A DNA stretch of 64,000 bases from Ostrea edulis (lineage: Eukaryota). The translations under genes and the position numbers were made by a program. Of this stretch, positions 1,827 to 21,092 are shown in pieces (the first letter of the stretch is position 1; each line of letters begins with the position of its first letter). The stretch spans positions 42,966,001 to 43,030,000 of the forward strand of contig NC_079170.1 of assembly GCF_947568905.1 (NCBI RefSeq). The letters are read 5' to 3'. Below the pieces are notes generated by a model. That model was given only the letters and a program-made list of their open reading frames with translations. It was not told the DNA's origin and searched no databases.

Positions 1827-4800
1827 TCAGACCTGAATGGTCATCTCCTGCATCTTCCTGAATTTTCGTCGGGCTGATATCAGGACAGGGCTAAAAGCAT
1901 AAAAACAAAAACCATGTAACGATCAATGCCACGTGCTTTATTGCTAGTAAATGTAGAAAAACCTAACTTCTGATCGCAAGCAATACGCCTTTTCGAGACA
2001 TGTTCGAGGTATTTCCCTTTGAAAAATTCTCGAACATAGTCAGCCGCGAAACAATGTGTTTGCATGCGGGAGTGGTACAAATATTCATTACTATATAAGT
2101 AAATGTGCTCAGTAAGTTTCTCATACGCACTTTCATCACCCTAATTCGACTGATACAGAAACTAAGTTAGCATACTTGATTTTAACGATTCGGTGCATTT
2201 GGGTTAATCGGCGATGACCTGCGATACACTTGATTGTGAGCCGGAATTGCGCACGCATCCAGCCAAGTAAGACGATGGAGCCGCAAAATTTTCATAGGCG
2301 AAGGCGGCTTCAAGCTGGTGTCCTTGGAGACAGTAGTATCGAGAGTGGCTTATTCTAAACCATAATGTTTTAATCCAGGTACACTAGGGAAATAAACATG
2401 AATGAAAATTTTATTGCTTTTTCTATAATAAAGCAACGGTTACTTTGAAATTGAATTGCGGAATAGGTCACCATTTCCTAGAAATGAACCACTCGTCTGA
2501 CTTTTTTGTGGTATCAAATTAATTTAAATGAATGAGGTTATGATATTACATAATGTCATCCAATTGTTATACCATTCTCGTTTTTTCTTTAAAGAAACCC
2601 CGATCATGAAAACATATACATGTATGTTTTACGGAAGTATAAGACATTTCTATAAACAATTAGATAAAAACGATACAATCAACATATTTTCCAAATCATT
2701 GAAAACCCACATGTCTTAAGGAATTATAACATATTTCTTGCAGCACCTAGGATACAATCAACATAAGTTTTCATATCTGTATACATATCAACCTTTTTTG
2801 TCATTATTATATACCCATTTCTAGCACTAGCACTTGCTGGTTCATTGGACACAACTTCACTGAAAAAGCCAAAATTCAGCCTTAGGGCACAGTGGGTTGA
2901 TATTTTTCTCTAGATGTTAAAAGAACTTCTTCATGTAGAATCTTTCAAATAACATGCACACCCATGGCCAGGAGTGGGATTACACTCGGGACTTTTATAA
3001 AAAAAAAAATTGTACAATGTAACATATACTGTGGACCAGAGGCTTAATGAAGTTTTTTGTTTTTTTTTTTTTACATCCTCCAGCTCTAGTTTCACAATTA
3101 CATCTTGTTATTTTCTAAATTATATATCATATCTAATGTTTCGTATTTCAAATACATGAAAGTCTACGCACATCATGAACGATCCTCCAGCTGCGATGAA
3201 CGCTGCGTAAACAAAGTACACGAATCCCTTCATGAATCCCTGAGTGTCTGCGTAAACATTGAAGAAAACCAAGTCCCCAATCAACCGGAACATTGTCTCC
3301 AGGAAATAGATATTGGCGAAGAGGGCTCCTGGTAAATAATACACAACACGGTTGATCATGTTAGGTCATGTATAAAACACCATTAAACATATTAAATGAA
3401 TTTCACGAAAATATGTTTAAAGAAAGAAAGATAGATAGATACCGGTAGATAGATAGATAGATTGATAGATGATAGATAGATAGCTTTGAACTGATATAAG
3501 ATCAACCATGTTACATATGTACCTTGTCTGGTTTCATTCACCAATCGTGATAAAATACCTCTGATGACCGGAAGTGCATTCAGAGAAATCACTCCGCATA
3601 TGGCAGCTGGAAAGAGCACATATTGATTTGATGTATGTGGATCGAATGTAAAAAAAAAATATATATAAATGATAAAGTGCACATTCATCTGCTAGAGAGC
3701 AGATATTATACAGATTTTGTCATCTTGGCGTTAAGATGAATATCACTTTATTTTTGAAATGCTCGCTTTATGATGTGTAAAGAAAATTGCATATCAAATA
3801 GTACTATATATTGCTACAGGCCAAGTGCGAAATATGCATAAGCTTTTACAAATATTGTCAACAGAAGATATTGATATCATTGATTGATTGATTGTATATT
3901 GTTTAACGTCTCTCTCGAGAATATTTCACTTATATGGAGACATTACCATTGCCAGAGAAGGGCTGCAAAATTTAGGCTTATGCTCGGCGCTTACGGCCTT
4001 TGAGAAGGGAGGAATCATTGTCATGCCACACCTGCTGTGACATAGGACCTCGCTTTTTGCGATCTCATCCAAAGGACCGCCCCATATAGTCGCCTCTTAC
4101 GACAAACAAGGGGGTATTGAGGACCTATTCTAACCCAGATCCCCACGGGAGAGGATATCAATAAATGCATTGTATATGGAAATTCCTACAGAGAGCAGAA
4201 ACAATGAGGGACTCATCTAATATTACATATGTAACTAAAATATTTCTGTTGAGAAATAATGTATATAAACAGTAACATGTTAAACCAAGTGTATTTGAAA
4301 TTTCAAACTTACTCTGCATTCAAACGGATAAAGAGCTAGGTAATTTTGGTAAGTTTTGTCTATTCAAGGTCACAGTGAATTGCAGGTATACAGAGTAATC
4401 CGTAGTCAAATTGTATTTGTCAAAGACACCAAAGAGTCTAACAATTCAACTATACAGGAAACGGGATAACAGCTGTTTATGTAACAACATTCTATTATCA
4501 CCATCCCTTGGTGTTTATGTCTCTCAACTAATTCGATATGCGATCATGTTCTACGTATGAACACTTTCTAAATCGATACAAGCTACTGACAAATAAGTTG
4601 ATATCAAATGAGTTTCAACAGTCTCGTTTCAAGTCAGAATTTCGCAAAGTCTATATATGGTCGTTACACTGTATATGGATCTAATTTACGAAACGAAATG
4701 ATACAACCTTCATTAGTTCGAAAGCTATCTCACATGTTTCATAACTATTGATGGTCCGTTCTTAACATACTAATTTTGACTATGCATTGCTCTGTTTAAC

Positions 4801-5364
4801 TGATGGCGGGTGTGACCGGTCAATAGGGAATGCTTACTCCTCCTAGGCATCTGATACCCCTCTGTTATGTCCAGAGATTCGTGTTTGCCCTTCTCTTCAT
4901 TTTGTATTGTTTGTATGATTTATGAAATTGATAAATGTTAGTTATCTTAACTTGTTCATCATATCCTACATCACATGGCCTATTGAAATCCTCACCCGTG
5001 GGGATATGGGTTAGAATAGGTCCCCAATACCTCCTTGTTTGTCGAAAGAGGCGACTATATGGGGAGGTCCTTTGGATGAGATCGCAAAAACCCAGGTCCC
5101 GTGTCACAGTAGGTGTGACACGACAAAGATTCCCCCCTTCTCAAAGGCCGTAAGCGCCGAGCATTGATCTAAATTTGGCAGCCCTTCACTTGCAATGACG
5201 ACGTCTCCAGACGAGTGAAATATTCTCGAGAGGGACATTAAACAATATACAATGAATCAACTATTGATATAATCCGGCTTTTGTAATTCCGTCTTGAAAT
5301 TATCTAAAGTTCCACGATATATACTAGCGGAAAAAAGAAATTGTGCATTATTTAGTATATGAAA

Positions 5365-5410
<46 letters not shown>

Positions 5411-7868
5411 ATAATAACAGTGAACAAATTTTATTTTTTGTAATACTGTTAACAAATGTATTCGTTACAACATTTCATAATCCATGAAAGTTAACGTCGA
5501 ATAACGGAAATTTTAGCACACTCGAAAGACACTGGTTTTCGAACTTGAATTAACAAAGTTAATAACGAGTGTGACCACCATTTGCATTCATGCATGCTTG
5601 ACAACGACGCCTCATTGATGCCACTAAAGTGTTCAGAAATGCTTGGGGGATGTTGTTCCCGATGTTGGTCAAAGCCTGGTCTAAATCAGTCAATGTCACT
5701 GGCTGATTTGGTAAACGGCGTAGACGTCGTTCCATTTCATCCCAGACGTGCTCGATCGGCGATAAATCGGGGGAAACAGCTGGTCAAGGCAAGACATCGA
5801 CATTCTGTTAAACAAAGAAGTCCCTGACTACACGTGCAACGTGTGGCCTTGCGTTGTCTTGCTGCAGAGTGATGCGATTTTGCTGTCTATGTATGAAGGG
5901 TATCACATGGCGCTGAATAATTTTGTCTCGATAGCGTACGCCGGTGAGATTTCCATTGACAATTTGTAGAGGGGTCCTTCCACGTGCTGTTATTCCACCC
6001 CACACCATAACGCTACCTCCACCGAATTGTCTACATTGGACAACACAAGCGTCCTGGTATAGCTCCCCAACGCGACGATACACTCTACAACGGCTATCCA
6101 AATGAAATCTGGATTCATCAGTGAACAGAATATTGGCCCAGTCCTGTATTCTGAATCGCAGATGTCGTCTGCAATACGCTAGTCTAGCGATACGATGACG
6201 TTGAAGCAGTATTGGGCGCACCGCTGGACGTCTTGGTCTGATTTTGTGCTCGCGCAGACGATTACACAGTTCTTGGACTGAATGGTCGAAGTAAAAGCAG
6301 TGAAACTTGCTGTCTGGAAAAGATTTGTCAGGTGCACAAGTCTAATGTGGTTGCCCTGCCGACGCGACTTCACACGAGGACGCCCAGAACGTGGTCGATC
6401 CCGAGTGTTACGAGATTGTTGGAAACGTCTCCATAATGACTGGATGGTGTTCCGATAAACTCCAAAGTGTCTTGCTACGATATTTTGTGACATTCCAGCT
6501 TGAAGCATCCCAAAAGCACGATTACGTTGGTTTTCGCTGAGTCGTGGCATGACAGAAGGGTAAATTTTGTCAAAACTAAAGTGCTTTCCTTAACGAATAG
6601 TGTCCAAACAAACATTTTACATTTCTTACTCCAAACAGTATTGGCCAGTAAAACTCGTGCGTACGAACATTTCAATAAACAACATGTGTTCACTAACCAT
6701 GAAAAAGCCCGTGCATCTTAGTCGGGTACTATCTGATATTGTTACAAAACATCACCTTTATCGATTTTTTTTATATTATATAAATACAAACAATAAATAT
6801 AGAAAAATTATAGTAAATTTTATGATGCACAGTCTTTTTTTCCAGCTAGTGTATGTGAATAAAAGACATAAAGAGGTAGACCTACATGCAGTCATGTATT
6901 TGTTATTTTCACATTCTCCAGAGCAAAACGCACAAAATACAGTTTTTTTCTCTGAATATGTTCAGTTTTCATTACAAAGAACTACTCTTTTAGAGTCAAT
7001 AAATGCAATGCAACTGCAAGTTCCCACATCATTAAAGTTATTGCTGAGTGGTGATGAGATATTTGAATCAAAAGATATCATAAAGATTTTTGAATGTGTT
7101 CAGAAATACATTTTGGAAAGCAAAAGATTTTAAAAATGCATTTAATACATGCGAGTTTGTTATGTATGTCTGTTCTTATCCTGTTGAGTCGGTACTCTCA
7201 ATATAGTTTCTCTCCTGCTCTGTTGTACTTATTCGTTTTTCTTTCACTTTTTTATTTGGTTTAATTTTTTTCTCTTCTGTATATCCCTTAGCTCCCATTA
7301 ACCAACCCCACATTTCTCTTTTGTTACCTTATTATTCATATCAAAAATTCATACTCCTCATATTATCATTATACCTTGAATGATATATCATCCTTTCACT
7401 TCATAGCTATATTGTAATTTCTTATGTACATCATTATGTGGACTTTACCTTGTACCTTAAAGCAGACGGCTTATATAGGCATTGCCTGCTGCCTATAATC
7501 CGTATTACATGTATGTTATTCATAAGATACTCTTTGCAGGAATAAAGTAAATGAAATATCTAGAATATCGCGTGAAAACCGGGGTTTTCTCACTTATTCC
7601 TGTCATTCTTGGTCTTGGAAATTATTCTTGATGAATGTTTGGGAATGACGTGTCATGATTGGTTTGCAAAACTAAAACCGGTTACAGTTACGTCACGTGA
7701 CTTACCAACGTATAACATCCACCAAACGGAAGCAAATCCCTCTATAGTGAAACTAAGAATTCCGGAGAGACAACTTAAAATTGCAATGGTATCGTCATTT
7801 GCACAAAAATGGAACAGCTTCAAAACAAAGACAGATATGCACAGCGACACTACGTCATCTGTAGAATC
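1827..7868 (-). CDS. SLC46-family (PCFT-like) MFS transporter, 3' part: exon-1 remainder 7868-7706, then exons 3606-3523, 3328-3172, 1890-1827
   Basis: All junctions are GT..AG with matching phases (1,1,2). Joined translation: DSTDDVVSLCISVFVLKLFHFCANDDTIAILSCLSGILSFTIEGFASVWWMLYV-A-AICGVISLNALPVIRGILSRLVNETRQ-G-ALFANIYFLETMFRLIGDLVFFNVYADTQGFMKGFVYFVYAAFIAAGGSFM-I-PVLISARRKFRKMQEMTIQV*. The P-x-IR-x2-LS-x2-V-x4-QGALFA pattern is typical of SLC46 C-terminal helices. The last exon is less certain. Confidence 0.85.
3430..3483. repeat. (GATA)n microsatellite, interrupted
   Basis: Direct reading: atagatagat...gatagatagata. Confidence 0.9.
3879..4149 (-). mobile_element. SINE-like element copy 1 (Meta/Deu-like core, (CAAT)n tail, no tRNA head)
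   Basis: Reverse complement begins CCCGTGGGGATC, contains GTCGTAAGAGGCGAC and ends GACGTTAAACAATATACAATCAATCAATCAA. Matches copies at 4995, 21093 and 54961. Confidence 0.8.
4400..4945 (+). mobile_element. Decayed 3' fragment of the Naiad-type PLE
   Basis: Matches 60530-61080 (ggtgtttatgtctctcaactaattcgatatgc ... gcttactcctcctaggcatctgat). Confidence 0.8.
4995..5260 (+). mobile_element. SINE-like element copy 2
   Basis: Starts CCCGTGGGGATA and ends aacaatatacaatgaatcaa. Degenerate TSD: ctattga-aatcc on the left, ctattgatataatcc on the right. Confidence 0.8.
5370..5408. repeat. (TA)n microsatellite inside the Tc1 terminus
   Basis: Direct reading. Confidence 0.95.
5559..6550 (-). pseudogene. 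Tc1 transposase pseudogene
   Basis: ORF 6179..6550 gives the paired-type HTH (MPRLSENQRNRAFGML...RSGRPR). ORF 5808..6221 gives FTDESRF, GGSVMVWGGI and QQDNARPH. The C-terminus SPDLSPIEHVW...GGHTRY* is recovered across stops and a frameshift, with 34 residues between the second D and E. Confidence 0.9.
6960..7557 (+). mobile_element. 5'-truncated non-LTR retrotransposon 3' end (probably CR1-group)
   Basis: ORF end LLLSGDEIFESKDIIKIFECVQKYILESKRF* (stop at 7133) resembles LINE ORF2 C-termini. It is followed by a T-rich UTR, an 8-bp hairpin (tataggca/tgcctata) and an aataaag-type end. Confidence 0.5.
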
Positions 7869-8046
7869 CAATCTGATTAAAATAAGATCTTTGATCCGCT
7901 CCGTTATTGTTATGTCGCTACACAAAGATCTGAAGACATCCCGTGTGGGGTCACGTCGGTGTCAACTTTGGTTTGGCCAATCAAATCGTCACTGCTTACA
8001 TCTTTGGATGTAAAAGTAAATAACGGTAAGCCTCGAAAAGTTCCGA

Positions 8047-11000
8047 ATGTTTAAACTTCCGAATGAAAAAAAAAACATGGCAGCGCCAGTTGGAACACAT
8101 GGGAGTACTCGGACTACCCCACGAAAAGTCTATCCTCTGGGGAACATTTGCCTTATCTGTGGGTTTTCATTTGTGAGCAAATCTGTTGACACTGATGGCA
8201 ACATTAAAATCAACAAATACCTGGACAAAAAACTCCGACTTTCCACGGACCGAATGAAAGTTTTGAAAGATGTGTGCGGAATTTCGGATAGTGTGGTATA
8301 TCCAACTGACACAGGTGTGTGTCAGAAGTGTTTCAGAAGTACCGAAAGAGTATTAAAACTGGAAAAGGAAGCAGCAACTATGAGGGAATCTTTTAAAGCA
8401 TCTGTTCAACTCACACTGCAAAGGTCAGTCACATTTAAATAACCCTGCTCACTTTAGAAAGTCGATAAATACCCCCGTGACCTTTTTTTCCCCAACTTCA
8501 AAATGGCAAGCCAAACTCGTTGATAGAATACAACTCACTAGGTTCATATACGTTTATAACTGCATATTTAATCGATTTTAAATCAATAAGTATCAAAGTC
8601 TTAAGTAAGTGTGTGTGTTGAAGGGGGGAATCACTTTCATGCAGATTTTGTTCAACATATTATTGCCATAAAGATATTTCATTTGTTTCAATATGTGTGG
8701 CTTTAATAATAAAAAAAAATCTTGATCTTATGATTTACCTTCAATCTCATATAGGTTTAATGTTTGTGTGCCTTCCCCCTCTAAAAGATTCATAGAAAAG
8801 AGAGAAATAAGGAGCCCATTTAAAGAAAATACAGATGTGAAGAGGGTTCGACCAGATGATCCACTGTTAGTACCTATCAGAAGGGTAATGCCCGTGAAGC
8901 TGGTACAACTCCAGCCTGCCAGCGCTAATGTAATTGTGAACAAAGCACGGCGCTCTCTTGGTGGGGACTTTTTGAAACAGGTAACGACTGGATATTGCAC
9001 TCGATTTCTATGCAAAGGCAGTGTGCTGGTGTATAATGCAAAGGATTAATACAATTTGACATGCCAATCAGATTAGTATTAAGTTCTTTGGTCGTCTCCA
9101 ATTTATTGTTGATTACGCTTAGTGAGTGTAAGGTATAGGATATATCAACAATTATGATTACAATCATATGTACATGAATGTGGCTGAAACACTTGTATGC
9201 TATATTAATCATAATTCTGTTGCCACCTGCTGCCTTCATTCCTACTACTGCTGAAAAGATTATGAATTACCCCTGCTAGTTGATAAAAGTTTTCAAAAAC
9301 TTTGAACACACATAACTTCATAAATTGCAGACCACAAGTAACTGAATATCTTTGAATACATTTTAGGAGAAAATAACTGATAAACATGAAAATGTTTATA
9401 AAAATGGAGAAGTTGAGGTACAGTGTAGTGAAAAGGTTGAGCTTGACCATAATGTTACAAAATAAGGCTAAGAATAATAATTGTTGTGTTTCTGCTAACA
9501 TCTAAGACAAAATAAGGGTAGGTAGTTAGGTGATTGGGACTTAAGAATCAGTGAATATCTTTGAAAACAAATTAAAATTGTTTTTGCATACTCAAAGAAA
9601 CAATGTGATCAACAACTCCTTGCAGGTTAACATTATGAACACAAGGGACTTAATTTTCACTATTGTTGCAACTTGGTAAGCTGTAATAAATATATTAATT
9701 ACATGATCATCTGTAATAAGTATTAGCTCCAAAACAATGTATATTCAATAATCTCTTAAACAATTTGTTAACTGTACCAGGTAGGAAGTATCATTCATTA
9801 GGTCGATCAGGTTAGCGGAAACACTTTAGTTTTTATTTTAAGCCTAAGCTGGTCAGATATTTTTTGCATCACTGATCTAGCTATTTATGATAATCATGAT
9901 AATGTTAAAGAATCAGTGATTTGATTAAACTGACCAGTTGAACTGTTGATTGTTATTTCTAATACATTATGTTTTGCATGTTACATTGGCACAGGTATGC
10001 CATATTTATTAATTGAATTTGTCTTTAGAAAGATTAATGTTTATCTTCAAGTCAGACTTAAAATCTGAAAATGAGATAATTCAGAAATAGTTACAATTAA
10101 GGCTCAAAAGAATTGATGTTCGGATGATCTGGGGTCTGTATAGTATGTATTTGGTCTAGTGGTTTGTCACAAGCATGCACCATTGGGGCTTGTTAATTTG
10201 AATACTTGTCAGAATTCCTCAATAATTAGGCTAGTAAATCAGATGTCCAAGTGACTTAGGTGGACTATTGTCGTTGTCCGTTAAACATTTTACATTTTAA
10301 ATTTTTTCTTGAAAACCACTAGGCAAATTGATTTGTTGCCATTTTTGGTATGAAGTTTCTTTAGGGTAAGAGGAATGTAAACTGATAAATTTATTATCTT
10401 AGCTTCTCCAAGGCCTCATGGGTTGTGCCAAAACTTATTTCCTCCCACACAGAAAAACCAAATGCATCTATAGGTAAGATGTCCTTGAAGCCATTTACCA
10501 AAATTGTGGAATTCATGGCCCTTTGGTATGAAAGGGGTTCAGTCTCCTAGGTGGGGTCAATATGGCCATATAGTACTGTAAAGATATATTAAATCTTAGA
10601 GAATCTTTTTCTTTAGTCAGAAGTGTGAGAAAAAATAAATGCATGGCTATGATGTCCATGAAGATCGCTACCCATATTGTGAAAATCATTGGCCCTGGGT
10701 TACGAGTTTAAGCCCTTGGGTAGAGCAATGTAGCTCTGAGCCTCTCTAGCGAAAATGTATTAAATCTTTTTCAATGTATGGGCGTTAGTACTCATGTGAC
10801 CGTTAAAGCCTGTGGGTCTCTCGCTTAAATTTTTGTTTTATTTTGCATGACTTTATAGTTTTGTTCTTTATTTTATTTTTTGCTTTGTTGACAGATATCA
10901 ACACCGTTGAATGACCTTCAGTATGTATTCAGTATTTGTCTAAACTTGATTATTGTCCATATTAAACTGATAGAAAACATGTAAATATTGATCATGTTGA

Positions 11001-13077
11001 TAGATTTTATATATATAAGCAAATTATGACATTTTTAGGTCACCTGAATTCATTCAGGTGACCTATTGCTATCTGTTTTTGTCCGTCGTCGTTCGTCGTG
11101 CGTTAACATTTGAACATTTTCAGCTTCTTCTCTGAAACTCCTGAACCAATTTCAACCAATTTTGGCACATAGCATCTGTGGGTGAAGGGGAACAAAAATT
11201 GTGAAATTCGTGGTCCCTGCCCCCCTGGGGCCTGAGGGGTGGGGGCAAAAACCATCAAAATGAGTGTAATTTTAAAAAATCTTCTTCTTTACTCCTGGAC
11301 ATCAAGAAGCCAAACTGTGGGCATAATTATAATGAGCGTTGAGCCCTCTACCAAAATTGTGAAATTCATGGCCCCTGGGGCAGGGGTTCTTGTGTTAGGG
11401 TGGGACTCTATTGGTCATATAGTGAAAATGTAGAAATTCTTTGAAAATCTTCTCTGTCTCTGGGTAATAAGTAGACAAACTAATAGCATGGTAATGATGA
11501 GCAAGGATGCCTCTTTATACCCCCGCAACAAGTTGTGGGGGGGGGGGGGTATACTGGAATCGAGTTGTCCGTCCGTCTGTAGATGCAATGGTTTCCGGGA
11601 TCTAAAGCATTATCCTTTCCACCTACCGTCACCATATCATATATATGGACTACCCATGGGATGAAGATGTTCCCTATCGATTTTGGGGTCAAAAGGTCAA
11701 AGGTCAAGCAAACTGGACATCGAAGTAGCAATAGGGTTTCCGGGCTCTAAAGTGTTATCCTTTCCACCTACAGTCACCATATCATACATATGGACTACCC
11801 ATAGGATGAAGATGTTCAATATCGATTTTTGGGTCAAAAGGTCAAAGGTCAAGCGCACTGGACATTGAAGTAGCAATATGGTTTCCGGGCTCTAAAGCGT
11901 TATCCTTTCCACCTACAGTCACCATATCATATATATGGACTACTAATGGGATGAAGATGATCCCTATCGATTTTGGGGTCAAAAGGTCAAAGGTCAAGCG
12001 CACTGGGTCAGGGGTTCTGGTATTAGGGTGGGGCCCTATTGATCATATAGTGAAAATGCATTTTATTTCTTTGAAAACCTTCTCCTCTGCTGCTGGGTAT
12101 TAAGTAGACAAACTAATAGTATGATAATGATGATCAAGGATGCTTCTTTCAAAACTGAAATTTATGGCCCCTGGATGAGGGGTTCTGGTGCAAAGGCGGG
12201 GCTGACCACATAGCTATTCAATGTTTCTTCCATCCAAAAGTAAAATTCTTATATTTAAACACAAACCTAATTCAAACATTGGAAGGTTGTTACATGATAC
12301 TCAGGTGACCTATAAGGCCCCTGGGCCTCTTGTTCTTGTAAATATTAAGTTCTCAGCTGTTAATATGGTTAATTTCCTGCTACCATTAAAGTTAATTTCT
12401 GTTATATATTTATATTAAAGGTATATGTGCATTATCCAAGTGGAAAAAAGACAGCCCTCATAACTTCTGAACTTCACAAAAGTATTTGCAAAACAATAGT
12501 CGGCAGGAGCAATGTTGAACAGACCATTGTAAATCACCTCTGTTCATCTAACCCAGAAGTTGTTACAAATGGAGTGTCAAGAGTAGTTATGAAAGAAGCA
12601 CAGACTCTTTGTAAGAGGGGGTCAGGATCCATTCTTCAGAGTAAAAACTTTAAAGACTTCTTCCAATTTAAGTGGGAGCAAATGAAAGAGGAACTGCGAA
12701 GGAGGTGCCCTACAATTCTTACATTACTATCAGCAGTAGTTAGTGATAAGGAGCTGTCCAGTGAAAGCAAGGGATTCATCCACATTATGGTATCTGCCGC
12801 TATTGCATTGCATGGAAGAAACCAGGAAATGTCCTTTTTCCAGTACATGACTGCACTTGTGTTAACTCATGGTGGATGCATTCAAAGGGTATGCTTACTT
12901 AGGATATAAACAATGTTATATGTATACTAGATATTCGGGTGGAGATGCAAAACAAATTCCCAGTACTCGATGATTTTTAGCTCACAAAAGTCAGAGGATC
13001 AGTTAAGCTTTTCTGATCGCCTGTTATCTGTTGTCTATCAGTCTGAGAACTTTTTTCATTTTGAGCTATCCAGAACT

Positions 13078-13108
<31 letters not shown>

Positions 13109-16100
13109 CTTTCTTCAATGGTCAGGATAATAGGGGTTCACATCGTTAAGGTTTCAAAATATTCTCAGGAACAGCAATTTGTTCCATTCTGACCTAGTGT
13201 AAAACATTATTGTACTGCTGTAAAAGTCATGCTACTCAGGTGAAATGATACATGTGTATATTGTTTTACAGGACATTGAACGACTATCAAACATTGGATT
13301 GAGTGTCCATCCCAAGACCATCCACAGGAAGTTAGAATCCTGGAAAGAATTGATAGATGTGAAAGTCAAAGAATTACGTGATTCATGGGCTGATAGTGGG
13401 AATGTGAAATACCAATTAGTGGGGGACAATTGGGACAAGAATATATTACCATCATACAGGACATCAGACCGAGGAACCCTGTCACTCCATCTCTTCAATG
13501 TTATTGCGGTTCAAGATAGAGTCCCACCTTTACCGGAGCTTCCTAAAGAGGAAAGAGAGATGACACAAGCTTGTGAATTTCTACCATCCATTGCTGATCA
13601 AAAACAACTGATGAAAGAATTGACATTCTTATTTGCAACCTCCATCATTGAGCATAATCCTCAGCTGCATAGAGTGTTTAACACTATTTATCCAAAGCAT
13701 TTGGATCATCCTTACAGTCATTACTCTGGACTTAAGACATTCCAAGTAAATATTTACATTCTACAGTACTGAAATTGTAAATTCATGAATATATTTCACC
13801 ATTAATTTAATTATATGCATGTTTTTAAAGAATTCCACTGATTGACTTATTGAATAATATGAATACCCATGTAACCATTTTTATACATTTGTGTTTCAGT
13901 ATCCACTTGGATTATATGACTGTAATGAAAACAAGACCCAAGAACTCATTGCTCTTTTGAAGAAGCTATCCAATGACTTCATACCACAAAAGAATGGGGA
14001 AATTGTTGAGCCTGTGTTTTTTGGGGGTATGTTTTTAATCACTTACTTACATTATTGTAATGGATAATGATTAAATATTTTTACAAATTCAAACAATTTT
14101 ATTTTGTGACAAAAGGGTATTGAACCTTATCTAATACACATTAAATGCTGTTTTAACCATTAATGCATGTATTATAGGAGACAGACTAACTGACGAAAGA
14201 GTCCAATCAGCTCAAAATGCAATGAAGAATGCTGCAACACCAAAAGAGAAATTGGAAGGGTTTATTTCCAAAATAGAAGATTTTCATAGATTGATGAATT
14301 TCTTAGAGGTACTTGTTAAAATTCAATTTTTATTATTTATTGCAATTGGTTGTCGTTTGTCGTCGTTTGTCATGCATTAACAATTGAACATTTTAAAGTT
14401 CTTCCTGATAACTACTGTTCCAATTCTTTTTAAATTTGGTATGAAGCATCTTTAGGACAATGGGGACATAAATTGTAAATTTAAGGACTCCTGGGGCCTT
14501 AGGGGCGGGGCAAAAGTTGACTAATTTTCAAAAATCTTCTCTTTACACTTGCATATTTTAAGAAATGAAACTAAATGCATAGTGATATAAAGCAGGAAGG
14601 CCTCTACCAAAATTGTAATTTTCTGGATCCCTGGGGTAGAGGTTCTGAGTCCAGGGTGGGGTCAAACTTGGTATGTATAGTGTATATGTGCAAAACTTAT
14701 AAATGATATCCGCTTTAATGCTATTGGTACTAAATTGAAACTAAATGGATATTTAGAATGAGCAAGTAGTCCTTCACCAAAATTGTAAATTTCATGATCC
14801 TAGGGAGTAAGAGTTTCGTTTCAAGGTGATGCCAAAATTATTATAATGATTTGAAGGACTTCTTTCAGTTTACTGATACCGTATAAAGTTTAAATGCATA
14901 TTTAGGAATAGCAGAAAAGGATGTACAAAAAATGGTGAATTTTGCAACCCCAGGGTTTTGACTCTAGGATGGGTCCAAATTAGTCATATCGCTTAATGTT
15001 AATAAATATATAGATTATGTAAAGACTTTCATAAGTGTACTCGCTTTTTAGACATTGAAGTTTTAAGAACACATGTTGTTTTAAACTGTTGCTGAATGAT
15101 AGAATTTAGCTTAGATATTCAGAACAAGAAATGTCTTTTCTAGATTTCATTGCCCACGAGATGAAATAATTTCAGGATGCCGAGTAAATTGCATATTAAA
15201 AAAAAAATTAGACAACATATTTTGAAATCAGGCACTTATATCTTTCTTAACCTCTTACAAGTTTGTTTCTCTATGGATGTGGGTATTGGTATGTGTACAC
15301 CTTAATCAAGATTCAAAATGATTAATCATCATTGTATACATAATGTACTTTTTGTATATATTGCTGACATATACCTCCCATTTTATTAACTTGATTCATT
15401 AGATACTTAATCCATCTTATATGTGTTATAGGCCATAGCCAAGATGACTTTCAGCACAGATAGTGGACAAGATGCTGGGACTCTCTATTACTACAGGAAT
15501 CTGCTGAATCATAGAGGTGTGAAGGGTGAAGTTAAGAACTCATATCGCCCATATAAGCTCCTGTGCTACACCGTGTTTGATGCTATTTGTCAGCTCTTTC
15601 TCCTTCATCATTTTGACATGACGGATGTTGATTCTAACCTCCCATTTCCAGAGGAATTCCAGGAATTGTCAGACAATGCTAAAGTAGAATGGTTAAACTT
15701 GGTGTGCAGTGAAATCTTGCAGACATGGTTCTTTGAAAATGAGAATGACATTTGTAAAGAATTAAGGGATGTGTTAGATGATCCACAGCACTCAGAGAAC
15801 TACTGGCTTTCGAGAATGCTTGAAAATGAACGTTTGAAGTGTCACTTTTGTGAAGCGACCTATGCATGTGTTGGCTCACTCCAATCCCATGAACAAAAGA
15901 AGCATGATGTTCAAATCCCTCCAAAACAGTCAAAATTGAAAGAGAAGAAAAGAGATCAGCTCCAGGATTACTTGGTAATGGTATTCAAGCTTGTCATTCT
16001 TCACAAAAACTTGGACACAGCTGTAGATATGGGAGATGGAGAGCGGGCAGTCAGGTCAGCTAAGTATGAACTGCCTCTATATAACAAGACGAACAAAGTC

Positions 16101-16610
16101 AAATACCTGATAGGATCTGTTCAGCTCACAGCCTTAACATCAAATAGTGGTGTACTCCCAGAAGATCAAAGACAACGGCTAGTTGCAAACAGATTTGTCA
16201 ATATTCAAGGTGGACAAAATAACAACATTGCCCTTGATGAATACCTTGAAATGGTGAACCGTGACAGCAAAGTAGCTTGTACTGGCAATCAGACGAAGGA
16301 TAGCATCATTCTCCATTCTAAGGAATACCCACATTTAGTCAATTTTGTAAAACATCTCGATGAAATTGCAAATGTTCGTCAAAAGAAGGGCTTTCATCAT
16401 CTACCTTCGTACCAGAGTGATGTGAAAAAAGTTTTACAGGATTTAATGCAAAATGATATTCTTGTGTATGACCCAAATAGGAAACTTCACTGCAAAAAAT
16501 TTGTCATTGATAGAAATCCATTCGACAACGCATTTACCAAACTTCCAATTATGATTCATAGGCACAAACCAACTTTGCCATTTTGTCGACTCCGGAATTT
16601 GCACATTTGA
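8047..16610 (+). CDS. Academ-type DDE transposase, 7 exons, ~993 aa, no stops or frameshifts
   Basis: Exons 8047-8423, 8755-8980, 12421-12888, 13272-13745, 13900-14026, 14178-14308, 15432-16610, all GT..AG with phases 2,0,0,0,1,0, total 2982 nt. Motifs LVGDNWD, VFFGGDRLTDER, IEDFHRLMNF, GTLYYYRN and NIALDEYLEMVNRDSK. N-terminal CxxC..CxxC. Extra exons in the 3.4-kb intron 2 cannot be excluded. Confidence 0.88.
10246..10825 (+). mobile_element. Decayed Helentron-type non-autonomous element (HINE-like) in transposase intron 2
   Basis: Shares blocks (ttgtccgttaaacattttac, accaaaattgtgaaattcatggcccct, 3' actcatgtgacc plus hairpin) with the element at 11033-12335. Confidence 0.55.
11033..12335 (+). 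mobile_element. HINE-like element in transposase intron 2
   Basis: 5' TTTTTAGGTCACCTGA..TCAGGTGACC palindrome, short (gtc) repeats, 3' subterminal TCAGGTGACC plus hairpin AGGCCCCTGGGCCT, T-rich ends. This is the structure of bivalve Helentron-associated elements. Confidence 0.75.
11514..12006 (+). repeat. Nested HINE fragment (TTATACCCCCGCAAC family) carrying ~3 x 145-bp satellite-like units
   Basis: tctaaag recurs at 11601, 11746 and 11891. Units contain ggggtcaaaaggtcaaaggtcaag. Confidence 0.8.
12974..13245 (+). mobile_element. Short HINE-like element in transposase intron 3
   Basis: Starts tttttagctcac...aagcttttctgatcgcc and ends actcaggtga. Confidence 0.6.
14340..15190 (+). mobile_element. 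Decayed HINE-like element in transposase intron 6
   Basis: gtcgtttgtcgtcg repeats plus repeated accaaaattgtaaatttc...ccctgggg blocks shared with 11033-12335. Confidence 0.55.
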
Positions 16611-17400
16611 TTTTGCCAGCTTTTCTACGCAGAAACTACAAGGGCGTGCATGTCATAAATATCTGCATAATATCGAAGTTTTAAGAATTTCAAGCAAGTT
16701 TATGTCTTGATACTTGGCCTTATATACATTGTATATGTTACTCTCATTGTGTAGTATTGTGCCAAAACAAGTCAAAAAATAGGACCCTGGTTTGTAAGGT
16801 CTTACATTGAAATTGATATTGAATTTGATGACTGACTTGATCTTGAGGCAGATGTTCAAAAACCATTTTCTTTCACCATCCATTTGACAGTAATAAACAT
16901 GTACAATTCTTGCATGTCTTGAGCTTGAATAAAACAAATACATACAGTGACACTAGTTATTCACTTAAATTTATTGGCATGTCGATCGAAGAAACATTTT
17001 AAAGATTAAGGGCGAGATTAAAAGTTCAATGTCTGACACATACACCCCCACCCCAATCAAATACCTAGTACTTTTCTTCAAGACATTACAACCCTTTAAA
17101 AATAATGATTTAACTCAATTCTTAAGCATAGGTACAATGAATTAAAAAGCAATTAACCTACTTAGTACAACTCTAATGACAGACTGAACATGTTCAATCT
17201 TTCTCATAGATCCTGAAAACAGAGCCTCCCCTTTGAATATAGCTTTTCATCCGACATGACCTTTTATATCTCGCCCCTTTCAAGCATGTAATAGAACAAA
17301 TTTTACCTTGACCACTGGAAAGGAAAAGCAATACTATTAATTTTGATGGGTTTTTTATTCCCCCACCCCCATCAGTTTTTTACGAGAAGTCATTGAAAAG

Positions 17401-19085
17401 TCAGGCATAACATGAATTTAAGTCGAGTGTGCCATCTAAGAAGTCATTATCTGAACTTCCAAAAGAATCTTCAGCCTCATTACTGTCTGAGTTGGAAATG
17501 ACACTCTGTTCAAAAAGTCTCTCCAAGGAAAGATATTCACAATTGCCACAACTACAAAGTTTGTGGCACACATCGCAGCATGTATGCTTTTTAACGTCCT
17601 GTTCAAGTTCACTTAAATTGGATTCACTCAAAAATTGTTTCATAATGTTTATTCGTCTACAAGTAGGTGAACGTAGGATATCTTTCATGGATTTGTCAAG
17701 TCTACGCAGATGATAAGCGTTAAACAAAATAAGGGCAATTGATGACTCCCCATCTCTTCCAATGCGCCCTATTTCTTGCACTAAGTCTACAATATTTTCG
17801 GGTATTCCGAACAGAATTACACTGTTGCAATGGGACACATCAATACCCATCCCTAATGCAGTAGTACAAATCACTAATCTGATTTTTGAAGTGTTATTCT
17901 GGTCATTTAAGCAATTGACAATTTCAGTTTTTTTGCCAATGGGTGTTTCTGAGTGAAACATTTCAATAAGAGGACTTGTGCCATCCAACTCCTTAATGAG
18001 ATAAGTGTAAAGTTTAGAAACATCATTAATGCTAGAACAGTACAATAATGTTTTGGGAAAGTCACTCTGCAAATGTTGAATTCCATCCACAAGCCAGGAC
18101 ATTGCCATTTCAAGATCACTGGATACTTTGGATATTGAGTATTTTATGTTAGCTTTATTTGGAGACATAACAATTTCTACTGTGTTTGGTCCAAAAGACA
18201 ACTGTTTTGAAACTCTTTTCTGAATTTTTACTGTAGATGTTGCACTTAGTGCGATAACACTGGCTTTTGGAAATAAAGATCTTAATTCTCCCACATGCGA
18301 AAACCACTTCCTAAATGCTTGTTTCTTTAAACCCATTCGGTCTTCACCCCTACATAAAAAAATAAACAATAACCAGGTCAGTGGTTGTGATAAAAACATG
18401 AGGAATAGTTTGTTGGAATAATGATATATTTACAATAAGTAAATGAAAAATTTACCATGTTGCAATCGTATGAAATTCATCAATGACTATGTTTTGTACA
18501 TTCAATTTCTTCATATCTTCTCTCCAAACTGCATTACTTATCAAAGATTCTGGAGATGCATAGATGACATCTATTTCCCCACTGAGTATCTGCCTGTCAC
18601 TTTCTTCACTTAAACCTGTAAAAATATTTTTTAAAGAATATCCTATTTATTATAATACTATATACCAAAGTTTGCTCAGATTATGTCGACACCCCGTGCA
18701 AATATTTGTCGATCCGACACTCAGCACATCAGTGAACAAAACCGGTATCATGGATTACATAAAGCCCTTTACCTTTGTACGCTGCCGATATACCCGGCAC
18801 AGCTGATATTTTCTTCACCTGGTCCTGCATTAGTGCAACTAAAGGACAGCAGACTAATATCACAGCACTAAATCCGGGGTTCATCTCGCGCATAAGTGGA
18901 ATGTAGACTTGAAAAGGCAGCGATTTGCCAAAACCAGTTGGCAAAATGGCCATACAGTCTTTGCCTTCAATCATGGCATCCAATATGCTCCGTTGTTCTT
19001 TCTTTAAAGCACTAACACCGAAACGTGGTAAAATTTTCTCTAAAGCTGCATCGATTACTTTAATGTCGGCCATTTTTCCTTTCAT
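17401..19085 (-). CDS. RecQ-like superfamily 2 helicase of AcademH, 3 exons, 473 aa
   Basis: Exons 19085-18773, 18615-18456, 18349-17401 with phases 1,2, total 1422 nt. Motif I LPTGFGKS, Ia CPLVALMQDQ, II IDEFH, III ALSAT, V TTALGMGID, VI QEIGRIGRDG, and a C-terminal Zn module CRR...CCDVC. Confidence 0.93.
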
Positions 19086-19260
19086 ACCGAATGCATTTTG
19101 TAAGAATAGCCCGCGATTGGTTGAAGCAGAAGCATTTCATTGGTCGACCCCAGGTTACCAAAGTTGACACCGACGTGACCCCACACGGAATGTCTTCAGA
19201 TCTTTGTGTAGCGACATAACAATAACGGAGCGGATCAAAGATCTTATTTTAATCAGATTG

Positions 19261-20230
19261 CTGTAGAATCATACCATCCGATTTTCTCCGATGTAAAACA
19301 GAATGGCTGACCCAGAAAATACAGTACATCCACACTACTTCTCGTCGTAAAAGGCGAAATCACGAAAGTTAAAGCGAGCACACACATCACAAATTGCCAA
19401 ACTTGGCCATCTCGGAGATTCGACGAACTAGTATAGAAAGCGAAAAATCTGCCGACCTTTTGACACAAAGTGTCATCGTTTGTTTTTCGTTTGGAGTTTC
19501 CTAAGGTTTCTGGTAAATACAAGCCCGTAAATAGATTAAAAAAGCACAACACTAACGACACTAAGCACGGCGGAACAGAGCCTAAATACTTTAGTGTATA
19601 TCCGGTAGAGATGTGTGCGATTGTCGACCCTATACCATCATAAAGATGTAGTAAGGCGAATGTGAAGGACCGTGACTTGTCGTATTTTGTGATATCTGCA
19701 ACTACACCAGACAAAGCCATAGAAAGAGTACATCGGGTACCTGTTATTCCAGCCAGTAAAAAACCCACGAAAAAATACTTGATATCGAGGTTGTACTGTA
19801 CGACAACAAGTGTGGCGAAATATTGTAGGAAGGTTCCTAGAAGAGGTAGGATGATGAAAAATCTCCTACCATAGTAGTCCGACATGATCCCTCCAAAGAC
19901 AACGACGAAGAGTCCCGGTATATACTCAGCATATCCGTAGTATGCGTCCCACTGCGCAGATTCGCGTTGAGCTTCCGCACTGTGAAAGGAGCAATTTTTA
20001 TTCGGAATTGATTGAGTGATGCTCGAGTTTGTCAGGTCCGCCTGAATTTGTTCACTGATATGTCGGAAAGTGTACTCCATTATAACGGAATATCCAGACT
20101 GCGTGGACACATTGTGTAAAATCAGAATAACACATATGGAGTAGTGCACAGACTTTTTAGATTTTGTTCGTGTTCTGATCGCATTATCGGTGTCAGGAAG
20201 AAGGTGGGTGTCCTCATTACCAGAATCCAT
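19261..20230 (-). CDS. SLC46-family MFS transporter, 5' part of coding exon 1 (truncated at 325 aa by AcademH)
   Basis: ORF 19253..20230 is hydrophobic, with MFS motif A-like GIMSDYYGRRFFIILPLLG and SLC46-like ADIT-x5-RSFTFALL. It stops a few bases inside the right TIR and resumes in frame at 7868. Confidence 0.88.
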
Positions 20231-21092
20231 TACTATATTTAGAATATAAAGCGGTGATTGTCCGTAATATGTAAAGCCGGGTTATCGTCTGACCATCAGA
20301 TTATGACTTATCCTAATATATAGAAATACAAGTAAACACAAGTAAACATAAGCGAGGACAATAGGTGACAAAATGGACCCCCTGTATCTCCAATATTTAT
20401 TTATGACATGCCTTACAGGAAAGCTACTTTATTTGCAAGACGCGATGGTTTGACTTTCTTCACAGCGTAGAGAGATAACTAAATGTATCATATTCTGTTT
20501 GATTAAAGAATTATGGATTCCGCAATGTTCCCGAGTTACCAGTAATAATATTAGTTAAGGAGACACCTAGAGGGGTAATACGGAAATATATGGCGTCCTT
20601 GAAAAAAATCATATTGGGCGAGGCGAAATTTATCCTCTCTATGATTTTACCTAGATACACTGATTAAGACATTATTCATTCTTAATGGTTTTCTAATGTA
20701 TATATACAACTGTCATAATAAATGACTGCAATGCGTGTATTCTTGAGATAATTTATCAAAAGTACAACAATGAAAAAATGGCTGCAACATTTAAACCATC
20801 AACAACAGGATAAAAAACTAAATTTTCAACAAACTGTAAATTCAAAAATGTTGTCTTTTCTTTTCAGATGACTTGGTTGGGTCAAGAATTATTGATTTTT
20901 GTGGTCTTGAATACAAAAGAGTTCCACATCATGGCAGCCGAGCTATGTATGGCGGGAATTTCAATTTTTAACGTTTTCAGGTTAGTACTGACGCTTATCT
21001 AGGCCGTATATCAACAGAATAATATGACAAATTTTTATTAAATAATTAATCCTATCATTTATCATGTAAAAATGTTTTGGGTTGCCTTTCCC

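What the first reader, a model, noticed from the sequence alone, without database searches (positions are those of the whole stretch)
1827..20230. An 11.4-kb AcademH transposon splits the first coding exon of an SLC46 transporter, probably creating a recent null allele
The 10-bp TSD (CTGTAGAATC) lies inside coding sequence and reads D-S-T on both sides of the element. The ORF runs ...KIGWY-DST-AI* into the right TIR and resumes DST-DDVVSL... 11.4 kb away in the same frame. Removing the element and one TSD gives an uninterrupted ~475-aa, 4-exon SLC46-size protein with no other lesion seen. The perfect TSD and one TIR mismatch imply a very recent insertion, so the allele may be polymorphic.
Basis: partly seen in the sequence, partly recalled or inferred. 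Interest (0 to 1): 0.85.

Follow-up and report, generated by a model that had tools for sequence, protein, structure and literature searches.

The report
Young transposon splits oyster transporter gene
An 11.4-kb helicase-carrying DNA transposon sits inside the first coding exon of an oyster SLC46-like transporter gene, and other individuals carry the same haplotype without it, so this is a recent, segregating and probably null allele: well documented, but an ordinary kind of event.

Summary

- **Element:** 11,392 bp (7869-19260), with 104-nt TIRs (one mismatch) and a perfect 10-bp TSD.
- **Host gene:** it interrupts codon 323 of a minus-strand MFS gene. The reading frame stops five codons later, inside the TIR.
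- **Gene model:** removing the element and one TSD in silico gives a 471-aa protein from three coding exons (not four). It is colinear with, and 60% identical to, a Saccostrea "proton-coupled folate transporter-like" protein. Its only solved relative is chicken PCFT (SLC46A1).
- **Empty site:** public short-read contigs from other runs carry it. Two are 100% identical to the in-silico excision over 1,756-1,790 bp, and about 19 contigs show it. The filled junction appears in only two or three of about 16 samples.
- **Effect:** the truncation falls between TM7 and TM8 and removes TM8-12. A null allele is inferred; no RNA data were available.
- **Element genes:** an open 473-aa RecQ-like helicase and a multi-exon DUF6589 protein with a DDE/RNase H-like fold. 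Both fit AcademH, but clade membership could not be tested.

This is a new member of known kinds, of modest interest.

The parts
19261..20230 (-). Host gene, 5' part of coding exon 1 (codons 1-323, ATG at 20230). Its last 10 bases are the right TSD copy.
   Evidence: ORF and translation. Pfam MFS_1 42.5 bits against a cut-off of 33.4. 61% identical to the Saccostrea PCFT-like protein from residue 1.
19253..19255 (-). Premature stop codon (TGA) in the filled allele. It lies inside the right TIR, after two element-encoded codons (A, I).
   Evidence: Translation ends ...KIGWYDSTAI*; sequence.
19261..19270 (.). Right copy of the 10-bp target-site duplication CTGTAGAATC.
   Evidence: Many other contigs diverge exactly at 19260/19261 (table 7).
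7859..7868 (.). Left copy of the 10-bp target-site duplication.
   Evidence: Empty-site contigs hold a single copy.
7869..19260 (.). AcademH-type DNA transposon, 11,392 bp.
   Evidence: TIR and TSD. It is absent from empty-site contigs L001-L007. Its internal sequence stands at about 3-6x single-copy depth in three runs.
7869..7972 (+). Left terminal inverted repeat, 104 nt, starting CAATCTGATT...
19157..19260 (-). Right terminal inverted repeat, 104 nt, with one mismatch to the left TIR. Its outer ~70 nt stand at about 2,000-2,700x single-copy depth, which suggests a MITE family sharing the termini.
   Evidence: depth bin 19191-19271.
7706..7858 (-). Host gene, 3' part of coding exon 1 (DDVVSL...WMLYV), followed by the donor GTAAGT.
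   Evidence: It is contiguous with the 5' part in empty-site contigs.
3523..3606 (-). Host gene coding exon 2 (84 nt, phase 1), with AG acceptor and GT donor.
   Evidence: tblastn with P0003/P0007; splice sites and coordinates; frame check.
3120..3328 (-). Host gene coding exon 3, ending in the stop TAA at 3122-3120.
   Evidence: The total CDS is 1,416 nt = 471 aa.
17401..19085 (-). Element gene 1: RecQ-like SF2 helicase, 473 aa. Three exons (19085-18773, 18615-18456, 18349-17401) with GT-AG introns. Motifs present: GFGKS, DEFH, SAT, QEIGRIGRDG. It is on the same strand as the host gene.
   Evidence: Pfam DEAD and Helicase_C. BLM/WRN/RecQ are the best PDB matches, E 7.5e-15. Exon model and open frame.
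8047..16610 (+). Element gene 2: multi-exon transposase-like gene. It has an N-terminal Cys-rich ORF at 8047-8442. Five further exons lie at about 12505-12888, 13269-13745, 13897-14028, 14177-14329 and 15414-16610. Exon borders are approximate.
   Evidence: Pfam DUF6589, 1.4e-15. Matches bivalve relatives exon by exon, with no stop inside the matched exon parts; one aligned stop at about 15429-15431 lies upstream of the likely acceptor. Candidate catalytic motifs GDNWD, GGDRLTDE and LDEYLEM are kept. A relative folds as an RNase H-like DDE transposase.

Best explanation
A full-length, apparently autonomous cut-and-paste DNA transposon of the helicase-encoding Academ type (AcademH) inserted recently into the first coding exon of an oyster SLC46-like MFS transporter gene, duplicating 10 bp of target.

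The insertion is a germline presence/absence polymorphism. Most sequenced individuals carry the uninterrupted exon, some on a haplotype identical to the one that received the element.

In the filled allele the reading frame ends after residue 323 plus two element-encoded residues. That point is in the loop just before TM8, so the product lacks TM8-TM12, most of the C-terminal six-helix half of the transporter. Host transcription would run into the element in the sense direction of its helicase gene.

Shown: the insertion, its exact boundaries, the empty site, the polymorphism and the intact remainder of the gene. Inferred: that the allele is null, and that the element family is still mobile.
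For: **Structure of the insertion**
- The 10-bp TSD occurs twice, against 0 of 100 shuffles giving two matches. The TIRs are 104 nt with one mismatch.

**Empty site**
- Contig L001 joins 20624-19261 directly to 7868-7433 with one TSD copy.
- L002 (1,790 bp) and L005 (1,756 bp) are 100.000% identical to the window with the element and one TSD removed. L003, L004 and L006 are 99.4-99.9% identical.
- Protein P0010, seen on five contigs, equals the reconstructed exon-1 ORF exactly.
- The 90% cluster holds 14 protein variants on about 19 contigs of 1.75-1.79 kb. Thirteen read through the site. One, P0017, stops at residue 320 because of its own frameshift.

**Filled site in reads**
- Run X2 has a 1,390-bp unitig covering 19235-20624 with no mismatch, so it runs 26 nt into the TIR.
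- Run X1's unitig ends exactly at 19261, as expected at a filled/empty branch.
- Run X13's 1,788-bp unitig covers 19261-20624 with one mismatch and runs on a further 424 nt, which fits the empty allele.
- Word shares separate X1 and X2 (0.90) and X3 (0.87) from 15 other runs (0.84).

**Host gene**
- Pfam MFS_1; relatives are named PCFT-like.
- The only PDB match is chicken PCFT: E 2.4e-21 for exon 1, colinear across the site, and 6e-47 for the Saccostrea relative.
- The 471-aa model is 60% identical to, and colinear with, the 471-aa Saccostrea protein.
- The insertion lies between hydropathy peaks 277-295 and 325-343.
- L001 against the window shows 8 synonymous and 9 non-synonymous differences, a pN/pS of about 0.35 by my estimate.

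**Element**
- Open RecQ-like helicase.
- DUF6589 gene with all matched exons open. A relative has a DDE/RNase H-like fold, with Hermes, P element, RAG1 and ISCth4 at Z 8-9 over 260-360 residues.
- AcademH is reported to make 9-10-bp TSDs and to encode a helicase (PMC10045372). Academ elements are reported as abundant in bivalves (PMC10294476).
- In X13, which lacks this insertion, other copies are at least 99.8% identical over 18300-19186 and stand at about 5.5-6x single-copy depth.
Against: - There is no RNA evidence. No spliced transcript of this gene was found in the protein collection, so neither normal expression nor the fate of the filled allele's transcript is known.
- The X2 unitig enters the TIR by 26 nt, under the tool's own 31-nt bridging rule. 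X1 or X2 may be the sample the assembly came from, so independent support for the filled junction is thin.
- The left junction was not examined in reads.
- Exact look-ups of the two junction-spanning ORFs found no record.
- Non-synonymous polymorphism is frequent (13 variable residues among 14 alleles), and one contig carries a frameshift. The gene may therefore be under weak constraint.
- Clade membership of the transposase in Academ was not tested against reference Academ sequences.
Confidence: 0.87

Rival explanations
1. The insertion is real, but the gene was already dispensable or decaying (a redundant paralogue or incipient pseudogene). On this reading the element destroyed nothing of consequence and the allele is effectively neutral.
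For: - Many amino-acid polymorphisms: 13 variable positions in 375 codons among 14 alleles.
- Contig L007 has a +1 T frameshift at about codon 312.
- No spliced transcript was found.
- Three PCFT mechanism residues are not conserved.
- A 61%-identical Logan protein (P0002) may be a paralogue.
Against: - 13 of 14 alleles keep the whole exon open.
- Exons 2-3 and all splice sites are intact, and the length equals that of the Saccostrea protein.
- pN/pS is about 0.35, below 1.
- The start codon and N-terminus are conserved with Saccostrea.
- The L007 frameshift lies in a T-run of a single unitig and may be an error.
- The same residue changes are seen in the Saccostrea homologue, so they are features of the lineage, not decay.
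Confidence: 0.15
2. The filled allele is an assembly artefact: a transposon copy from elsewhere was wrongly joined into this exon.
For: The TIR tips are extremely repetitive, at about 2,000-2,700x depth. That is the kind of sequence where assemblers err. The left junction was not checked in reads.
Against: - The element is flanked by a perfect 10-bp duplication of exactly the sequence that is single in empty-site contigs. A misjoin would not create this.
- The X2 unitig joins flank to TIR without mismatch.
- X1 and X2 hold extra sampled words that the other runs lack.
Confidence: 0.02
3. The element belongs to another helicase-bearing transposon group (KolobokH or Helitron-like), or to an undescribed superfamily, rather than AcademH.
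For: The transposase matches only Pfam DUF6589, and its relatives are unnamed. No Academ reference sequence was available, and the defining paper is not held.
Against: - The 10-bp TSD and a separate SF2 (RecQ-like, not Pif1-like) helicase match what is reported for AcademH.
- From my own knowledge, Kolobok makes 4-bp TTAA TSDs, and Helitrons have no TIRs or TSDs and carry a Rep/Pif1 protein.
- Academ elements are reported as abundant and bivalve-enriched.
Confidence: 0.08
4. The filled allele keeps its function, because the element is removed from the transcript by splicing or is excised somatically at high rate.
For: None directly. The element carries several GT-AG introns of its own.
Against: Restoring the frame needs removal of exactly 11,402 nt. 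No donor/acceptor pair lies at the boundaries. The stop falls five codons after the last pre-TSD codon.
Confidence: 0.03

Closest known systems
AcademH lineage of the Academ DNA-transposon superfamily (Kojima 2020, Mob DNA 11:15; cited in PMC10045372 and PMC10799480)
   Same: TIRs, a 10-bp TSD (9-10 bp reported), and a DEAD/Helicase_C SF2 helicase gene separate from the transposase gene. The host is a bivalve, where Academ elements are reported as abundant (PMC10294476).
   Different: Membership of the transposase clade was not tested here. At 11.4 kb the element is about twice the mean curated bivalve Academ length (5,565 bp, PMC10294476). Its TIR tips are shared with a very abundant short-element family.
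SLC46A1 / proton-coupled folate transporter (chicken PCFT, PDB 7bc6/7bc7)
   Same: It is the only solved relative by sequence. The alignment is colinear over residues 88-374, the size is similar (471 against 480 aa), the fold is MFS, and the SDxxGRR motif after TM2 is conserved.
   Different: Chicken PCFT Arg156, Asp164 and Glu193 align with Phe157, Thr165 and His195 here. Those residues form the TM4 salt bridge and proton site, bind folate, and form the TM5-TM10 gate (PMC7612623). The substrate and the coupling are therefore unknown, and "folate transporter" should not be assumed.
Classical transposon-insertion null alleles (for example the Ac/Ds-like insertion in pea SBE1 behind Mendel's wrinkled seed; from my own knowledge)
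   Same: A cut-and-paste element with a TSD inside a coding exon, segregating against an intact allele.
   Different: No phenotype is known here, and the element class is much less studied.
Other helicase-carrying transposons: KolobokH and Helitron (named together with AcademH in PMC10799480)
   Same: They encode a helicase inside a mobile element.
   Different: This one has long TIRs, a 10-bp TSD and a RecQ-like helicase with a DDE-fold partner. It does not have a Rep/Pif1 protein or a 4-bp TTAA target.

Membership tests
AcademH transposons | Terminal inverted repeats | tested here: met
   104-nt TIRs with one mismatch.
AcademH transposons | Target-site duplication of 9 or 10 bp (AcademX: 3-4 bp) | tested here: met
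   Perfect 10-bp TSD, single copy in empty-site contigs. The criterion is as stated in PMC10045372.
AcademH transposons | Encodes a superfamily-II helicase in addition to the transposase | tested here: met
   DEAD plus Helicase_C. BLM/WRN/RecQ are the best PDB hits. Open 473-aa three-exon model with motifs I, Ia, II, III and VI.
AcademH transposons | Transposase falls in the Academ clade of DDE transposases | tested here: inconclusive
   Pfam DUF6589 only. The AF2 model of the Pinctada relative P0025 (pLDDT 77) matches Hermes, P element, RAG1, ISCth4 and Transib at Z 5.9-9.0. Candidate D, D and E motifs are conserved. No Academ reference sequences or profiles were available.
AcademH transposons | No XPG nuclease domain (the mark of AcademX) | tested here: inconclusive
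   No XPG hit among the ORFs scanned. Short exons between 8.4 and 12.4 kb were not scanned exhaustively.
SLC46 family of MFS transporters | MFS fold with about 12 transmembrane helices | tested here: met
   MFS_1 at 42.5 bits, above the 33.4 cut-off, on exon 1 alone. Hydropathy peaks run along the 471-aa model.
SLC46 family of MFS transporters | Closest characterised relative is an SLC46 member, aligned colinearly | tested here: met
   PCFT is the only PDB sequence hit: E 2.4e-21, residues 88-374 against 87-368. The Saccostrea relative scores 6e-47. Relatives are named PCFT-like by NCBI. No tree against SLC46A1/A2/A3 was made.
SLC46A1 (PCFT) functional orthologue | Folate-binding and proton-coupling residues (chicken Arg156, Asp164, Glu193) | tested here: not met
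   They align with Phe157, Thr165 and His195. Residue roles are from PMC7612623.
Segregating transposon insertion (presence/absence polymorphism) | Both the filled site with TSD and the exact empty site with one target copy exist in the species | tested here: met
   Empty: L001-L007, with L002 and L005 100% identical to the excised sequence. Filled: the window, plus the X2 unitig 26 nt into the TIR. All runs carry the same organism label or 'oyster metagenome'.

The most novel reading that the evidence does not exclude
This copy belongs to a currently mobile, autonomous AcademH family. Supporting this are several copies at least 99.8% identical, a filled/empty pair on the same haplotype, and thousands of short elements sharing its termini. 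If so, it would offer a natural, sequence-defined substrate for working out how Academ transposases use a RecQ-like helicase. It would also provide a naturally segregating knock-out of an invertebrate SLC46-like transporter, whose phenotype (for example uptake of microbial or nucleotide ligands) could be tested in carriers.
Probability: 0.45. Interest if true: 0.5.

Novelty: new member of a known kind. Interest (0 to 1): 0.36.

Why it matters
Exon-disrupting transposon polymorphisms are expected in TE-rich, highly polymorphic bivalve genomes, so the event itself is not surprising. It has two uses.

1. It gives direct evidence of recent germline movement, with the exact filled and empty sites, for a superfamily whose mechanism is barely studied. 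Both element genes appear intact.
2. It marks a ready-made loss-of-function allele of an SLC46-like transporter in an oyster, which could be genotyped by a three-primer PCR and followed in families or populations.

It also warns annotators that the reference assembly carries the disrupted allele of this gene.

Tried and rejected
- **Defining paper:** the AcademH paper (Kojima 2020) is not held under its DOI or PMC id. I used statements about it in PMC10045372 and PMC10799480.
- **Filled allele in other contigs:** exact look-ups of the 325-aa truncated ORF and of the 90-aa ORF spanning the left junction found no record. This is no proof of absence.
- **Expression:** a search for spliced products through the C-terminal third of the Saccostrea relative returned only that protein. 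The first search found no full-length product of this gene.
- **Fourth coding exon near 1827-2100:** no similarity to relatives and no convincing frame. The CDS ends at 3120.
- **Naming the transposase:** cluster names for its relatives are "hypothetical" or "uncharacterized". The Atlas search gave only DUF6589 clusters. The one paper mentioning DUF6589 says nothing about transposons.
- **Fold search:** Foldseek E-values for the transposase model were weak (best 2e-3). The VIA-align second look gave a uniform list of DDE transposases at Z 8-9, close to the tool's stated background of Z 7-8. I treat this as support for the fold, not for a family.
- **Nested repeats:** no segment of the element is shared with the rest of the window beyond two ~100-nt matches at 74% identity.
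- **Species:** run accessions were not found in any paper, so I did not verify the species. Another agent's note calls this genome flat oyster.
Full report
**1. The observation**

CTGTAGAATC occurs exactly twice in the 64-kb window, at 7859-7868 and 19261-19270. None of 100 dinucleotide-preserving shuffles gave two matches. Directly inside these copies lie inverted repeats of 104 nt, at 7869-7972 and 19157-19260, 99% complementary. The single mismatch is at TIR position 72, and similarity ends after position 104. The bounded element is 11,392 bp. There are no Ns in the window.

**2. The host gene**

The gene is on the minus strand. An ORF starts at the ATG at 20230 and reads 325 codons, ending ...KIGWYDSTAI followed by a stop. 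The stop is TGA at 19255-19253, inside the right TIR (sequence). The same frame resumes DSTDDVVSL... at 7868 and continues to a GTAAGT donor after 7706.

Guided by oyster relatives, I placed two further coding exons:
- exon 2 at 3606-3523, with AG and GT borders, phase 1;
- exon 3 at 3328-3120, ending in TAA.

With the element and one TSD copy removed in a script, the CDS is 1,416 nt, or 471 aa. It aligns end to end with the 471-aa Saccostrea cucullata "proton-coupled folate transporter-like" protein P0003 at 60% identity (284 of 475 columns), with small gaps (1-2 residues internally, 4 at the C-terminal end) and no break at the insertion point. "Four exons" and the lower limit of 1827 are not: nothing coding was found at 1780-2200.

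**3. Which family**

Exon 1 alone passes Pfam MFS_1, at 42.5 bits against a cut-off of 33.4. Against all PDB sequences the only hit is chicken PCFT (SLC46A1, 7bc6/7bc7). The E-value is 2.4e-21 over residues 88-374, colinear across the insertion site. The Saccostrea relative scores 6e-47. NCBI names the relatives PCFT-like.

In that alignment, chicken Arg156, Asp164 and Glu193 face Phe157, Thr165 and His195. These residues form the TM4 salt bridge and proton site, bind the folate gamma-carboxylate, and form the TM5-TM10 gate (PMC7612623). I therefore file the gene as an SLC46-family MFS transporter of unknown substrate, not as a folate:proton symporter.

**4. Where the break falls**

A Kyte-Doolittle scan puts hydrophobic peaks at 277-295 and 325-343. 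The TSD codons are residues 321-323. The truncated product therefore ends in the loop before TM8 and lacks TM8-12. That is most of the C-terminal half of an MFS protein. On general knowledge of MFS transporters, such a fragment cannot form the substrate path. This is the basis, by inference, for calling the allele null.

**5. The empty site exists**

The homology search returned P0001, 98% identical and 401 aa, from a 1,793-bp Logan contig. That contig, L001, matches 20624-19261 and then 7868-7433, overlapping by exactly the 10 TSD bases. The junction alignment shows one target copy with one SNP.

Its 90% cluster holds 14 protein variants on about 19 contigs of 1.75-1.79 kb. Thirteen read through the insertion site. 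P0010, seen on five contigs, is identical to my reconstructed exon-1 ORF over all 391 codons.

At the DNA level:
- L002 (1,790 bp) and L005 (1,756 bp) are 100.000% identical to the window with the element and one TSD removed.
- L003, L004 and L006 are 99.4-99.9% identical.
- L001 and L007 are 98.2-98.5% identical.

The amino-acid variants occur in shuffled combinations among the alleles, as expected for recombining alleles of one species. Since unrelated haplotypes differ by about 1.5% here, zero differences in 1.79 kb means the insertion happened recently on a haplotype still common in the population.

**6. Reads**

I searched runs with 19100-19500 and laid 18300-20700, 2,401 letters and within the operators' limit, on four runs.
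- X13 has one 1,788-bp unitig that covers 19261-20624 with one mismatch and continues for 424 more letters. That is the size of the empty-site contigs, and it shows no branch.
- X2 has a 1,390-bp unitig covering 19235-20624 with no mismatch. It therefore contains the last 26 nt of the TIR joined to the exon. This is under the tool's 31-nt bridging rule, but the sequence differs wholly from the empty allele at those positions.
- X1's unitig stops exactly at 19261. Both alleles would branch there, so I infer X1 is heterozygous.
- X24, raw reads at low depth, was uninformative at the flank.

These three states calibrate the word shares: 0.90 for X1 and X2, 0.87 for X3, and 0.84 for 15 other runs. 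By inference, two or three of about 16 samples carry the insertion. X1 or X2 may be the assembly's own source.

**7. The element**

On the minus strand, starting 175 nt inside the right end, is a three-exon gene (19085-18773, 18615-18456, 18349-17401) with GT-AG introns. It encodes an open 473-aa protein. It has Pfam DEAD and Helicase_C domains. Its best PDB relatives are BLM, WRN and RecQ, with E down to 7.5e-15. Motifs GFGKS, DEFH, SAT and QEIGRIGRDG are present.

On the plus strand, a 388-aa ORF (15444-16610) matches Pfam DUF6589 at 1.4e-15. An exhaustive profile-free search found 621 relatives. The longer ones come from Pinctada, Mytilus, Argopecten, Branchiostoma and Saccoglossus, and all are unnamed. 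Their tblastn matches define exons at about 12505-12888, 13269-13745, 13897-14028, 14177-14329 and 15414-16610. An N-terminal Cys-rich ORF lies at 8047-8442. No stop falls inside the matched exon parts; the one aligned stop, at about 15429-15431, lies upstream of the likely acceptor.

An AlphaFold model of the Pinctada relative has mean pLDDT 76.8, with the core above 90. It shows a beta-beta-beta-alpha-beta-alpha-beta core followed by a large helical insertion. Foldseek's top hits are Hermes, ISCth4, P element, RAG1 and Transib (best E 2e-3, probability 0.9). VIA-align gives Z 8-9 over 260-360 residues for the same proteins, and the first 39 rows are all DDE recombinases. The window copy keeps the conserved GDNWD, GGDRLTDE and LDEYLEM motifs that are the candidate D, D, E triad.

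A DDE-fold transposase, a separate SF2 helicase, long TIRs and a 10-bp TSD together are what is reported for AcademH (9-10-bp TSDs and a helicase: PMC10045372; PMC10799480). Academ elements are reported as abundant and enriched in bivalves (PMC10294476). I could not test clade membership, because no Academ reference sequence is available here and the defining paper is not held.

**8. Family activity**

Element-internal contigs stand at about 3-6 times the single-copy depth in X1, X2 and X13. In X13, which lacks this insertion, they are at least 99.8% identical to this copy over 18300-19186 (tables 2 and 8). The outer ~70 nt of the TIR stand at about 2,000-2,700 times single-copy depth. Dozens of contigs diverge exactly at 19260-19262 into unrelated flanks (tables 2 and 7). 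This points to a very large family of short elements sharing the termini. First-reader notes from this scan list several other 11.2-11.75-kb AcademH-type copies in the same genome; I did not check them.

**9. Is the gene under constraint?**

Between L001 and the window, exon 1 has 8 synonymous and 9 non-synonymous codon differences. By my rough site count that is a pN/pS of about 0.35: purifying selection, but not strong. One contig (L007) carries a +1 T in a T-run at about codon 312, which truncates the ORF at 320 aa. This may be a second natural loss-of-function allele or an error. No transcript-derived product of the gene was found. Expression is therefore untested.

**10. Verdict**

- three coding exons and 471 aa;
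- the CDS ends at 3120;
- the TIR mismatch is not an age measure;
- the gene is SLC46-like but lacks PCFT's coupling residues.

This is an ordinary kind of event, a segregating transposon insertion in a coding exon, documented unusually cleanly and involving a little-studied element class.

Noticed in passing
window 19191-19260 (and its mirror at 7869-7938): The outer ~70 nt of the TIR stand at about 2,000-2,700x single-copy depth in three runs. Many contigs diverge at exactly the element end, and there are hairpin-like 'opposite strand' joints. This suggests a very large MITE-like family sharing the termini of this element.
   Followed up: partly
L007:1295-1305 (equivalent to window about 19293-19297, codon ~312): One empty-site contig from another run has an extra T in a T-run of exon 1, truncating the ORF at 320 aa (P0017). 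It may be a second loss-of-function allele or a unitig error.
   Followed up: partly
window 5559-6550, minus strand (inside intron 1 of the host gene): A decayed Tc1/mariner-like transposase, broken into three ORFs: HTH_28/HTH_38 at 6182-6550 and DDE_3 at 5811-6221, both below the Pfam cut-offs.
   Followed up: partly
window 19700-19790 and 19640-19660 (host residues 157, 165, 195): The oyster SLC46-like protein and its Saccostrea relative carry Phe, Thr and His where chicken PCFT has Arg156, Asp164 and Glu193. The 'folate transporter-like' annotation of this bivalve group may therefore mislead.
   Followed up: partly
window 20568-20648: A short repeat upstream of the host gene stands at about 50x single-copy depth. 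It is where all the empty-site unitigs end, at 20624.
   Followed up: no
window 5257-5427: An AT-rich microsatellite that reads as (IY)n in one frame.
   Followed up: no
window 8047-8442: The first ORF of the element is Cys-rich (CxxC ... CxxC) with no Pfam family. It matches the N-terminus of a Mytilus relative annotated as C2H2-type domain-containing, so it is probably the DNA-binding head of the transposase.
   Followed up: partly
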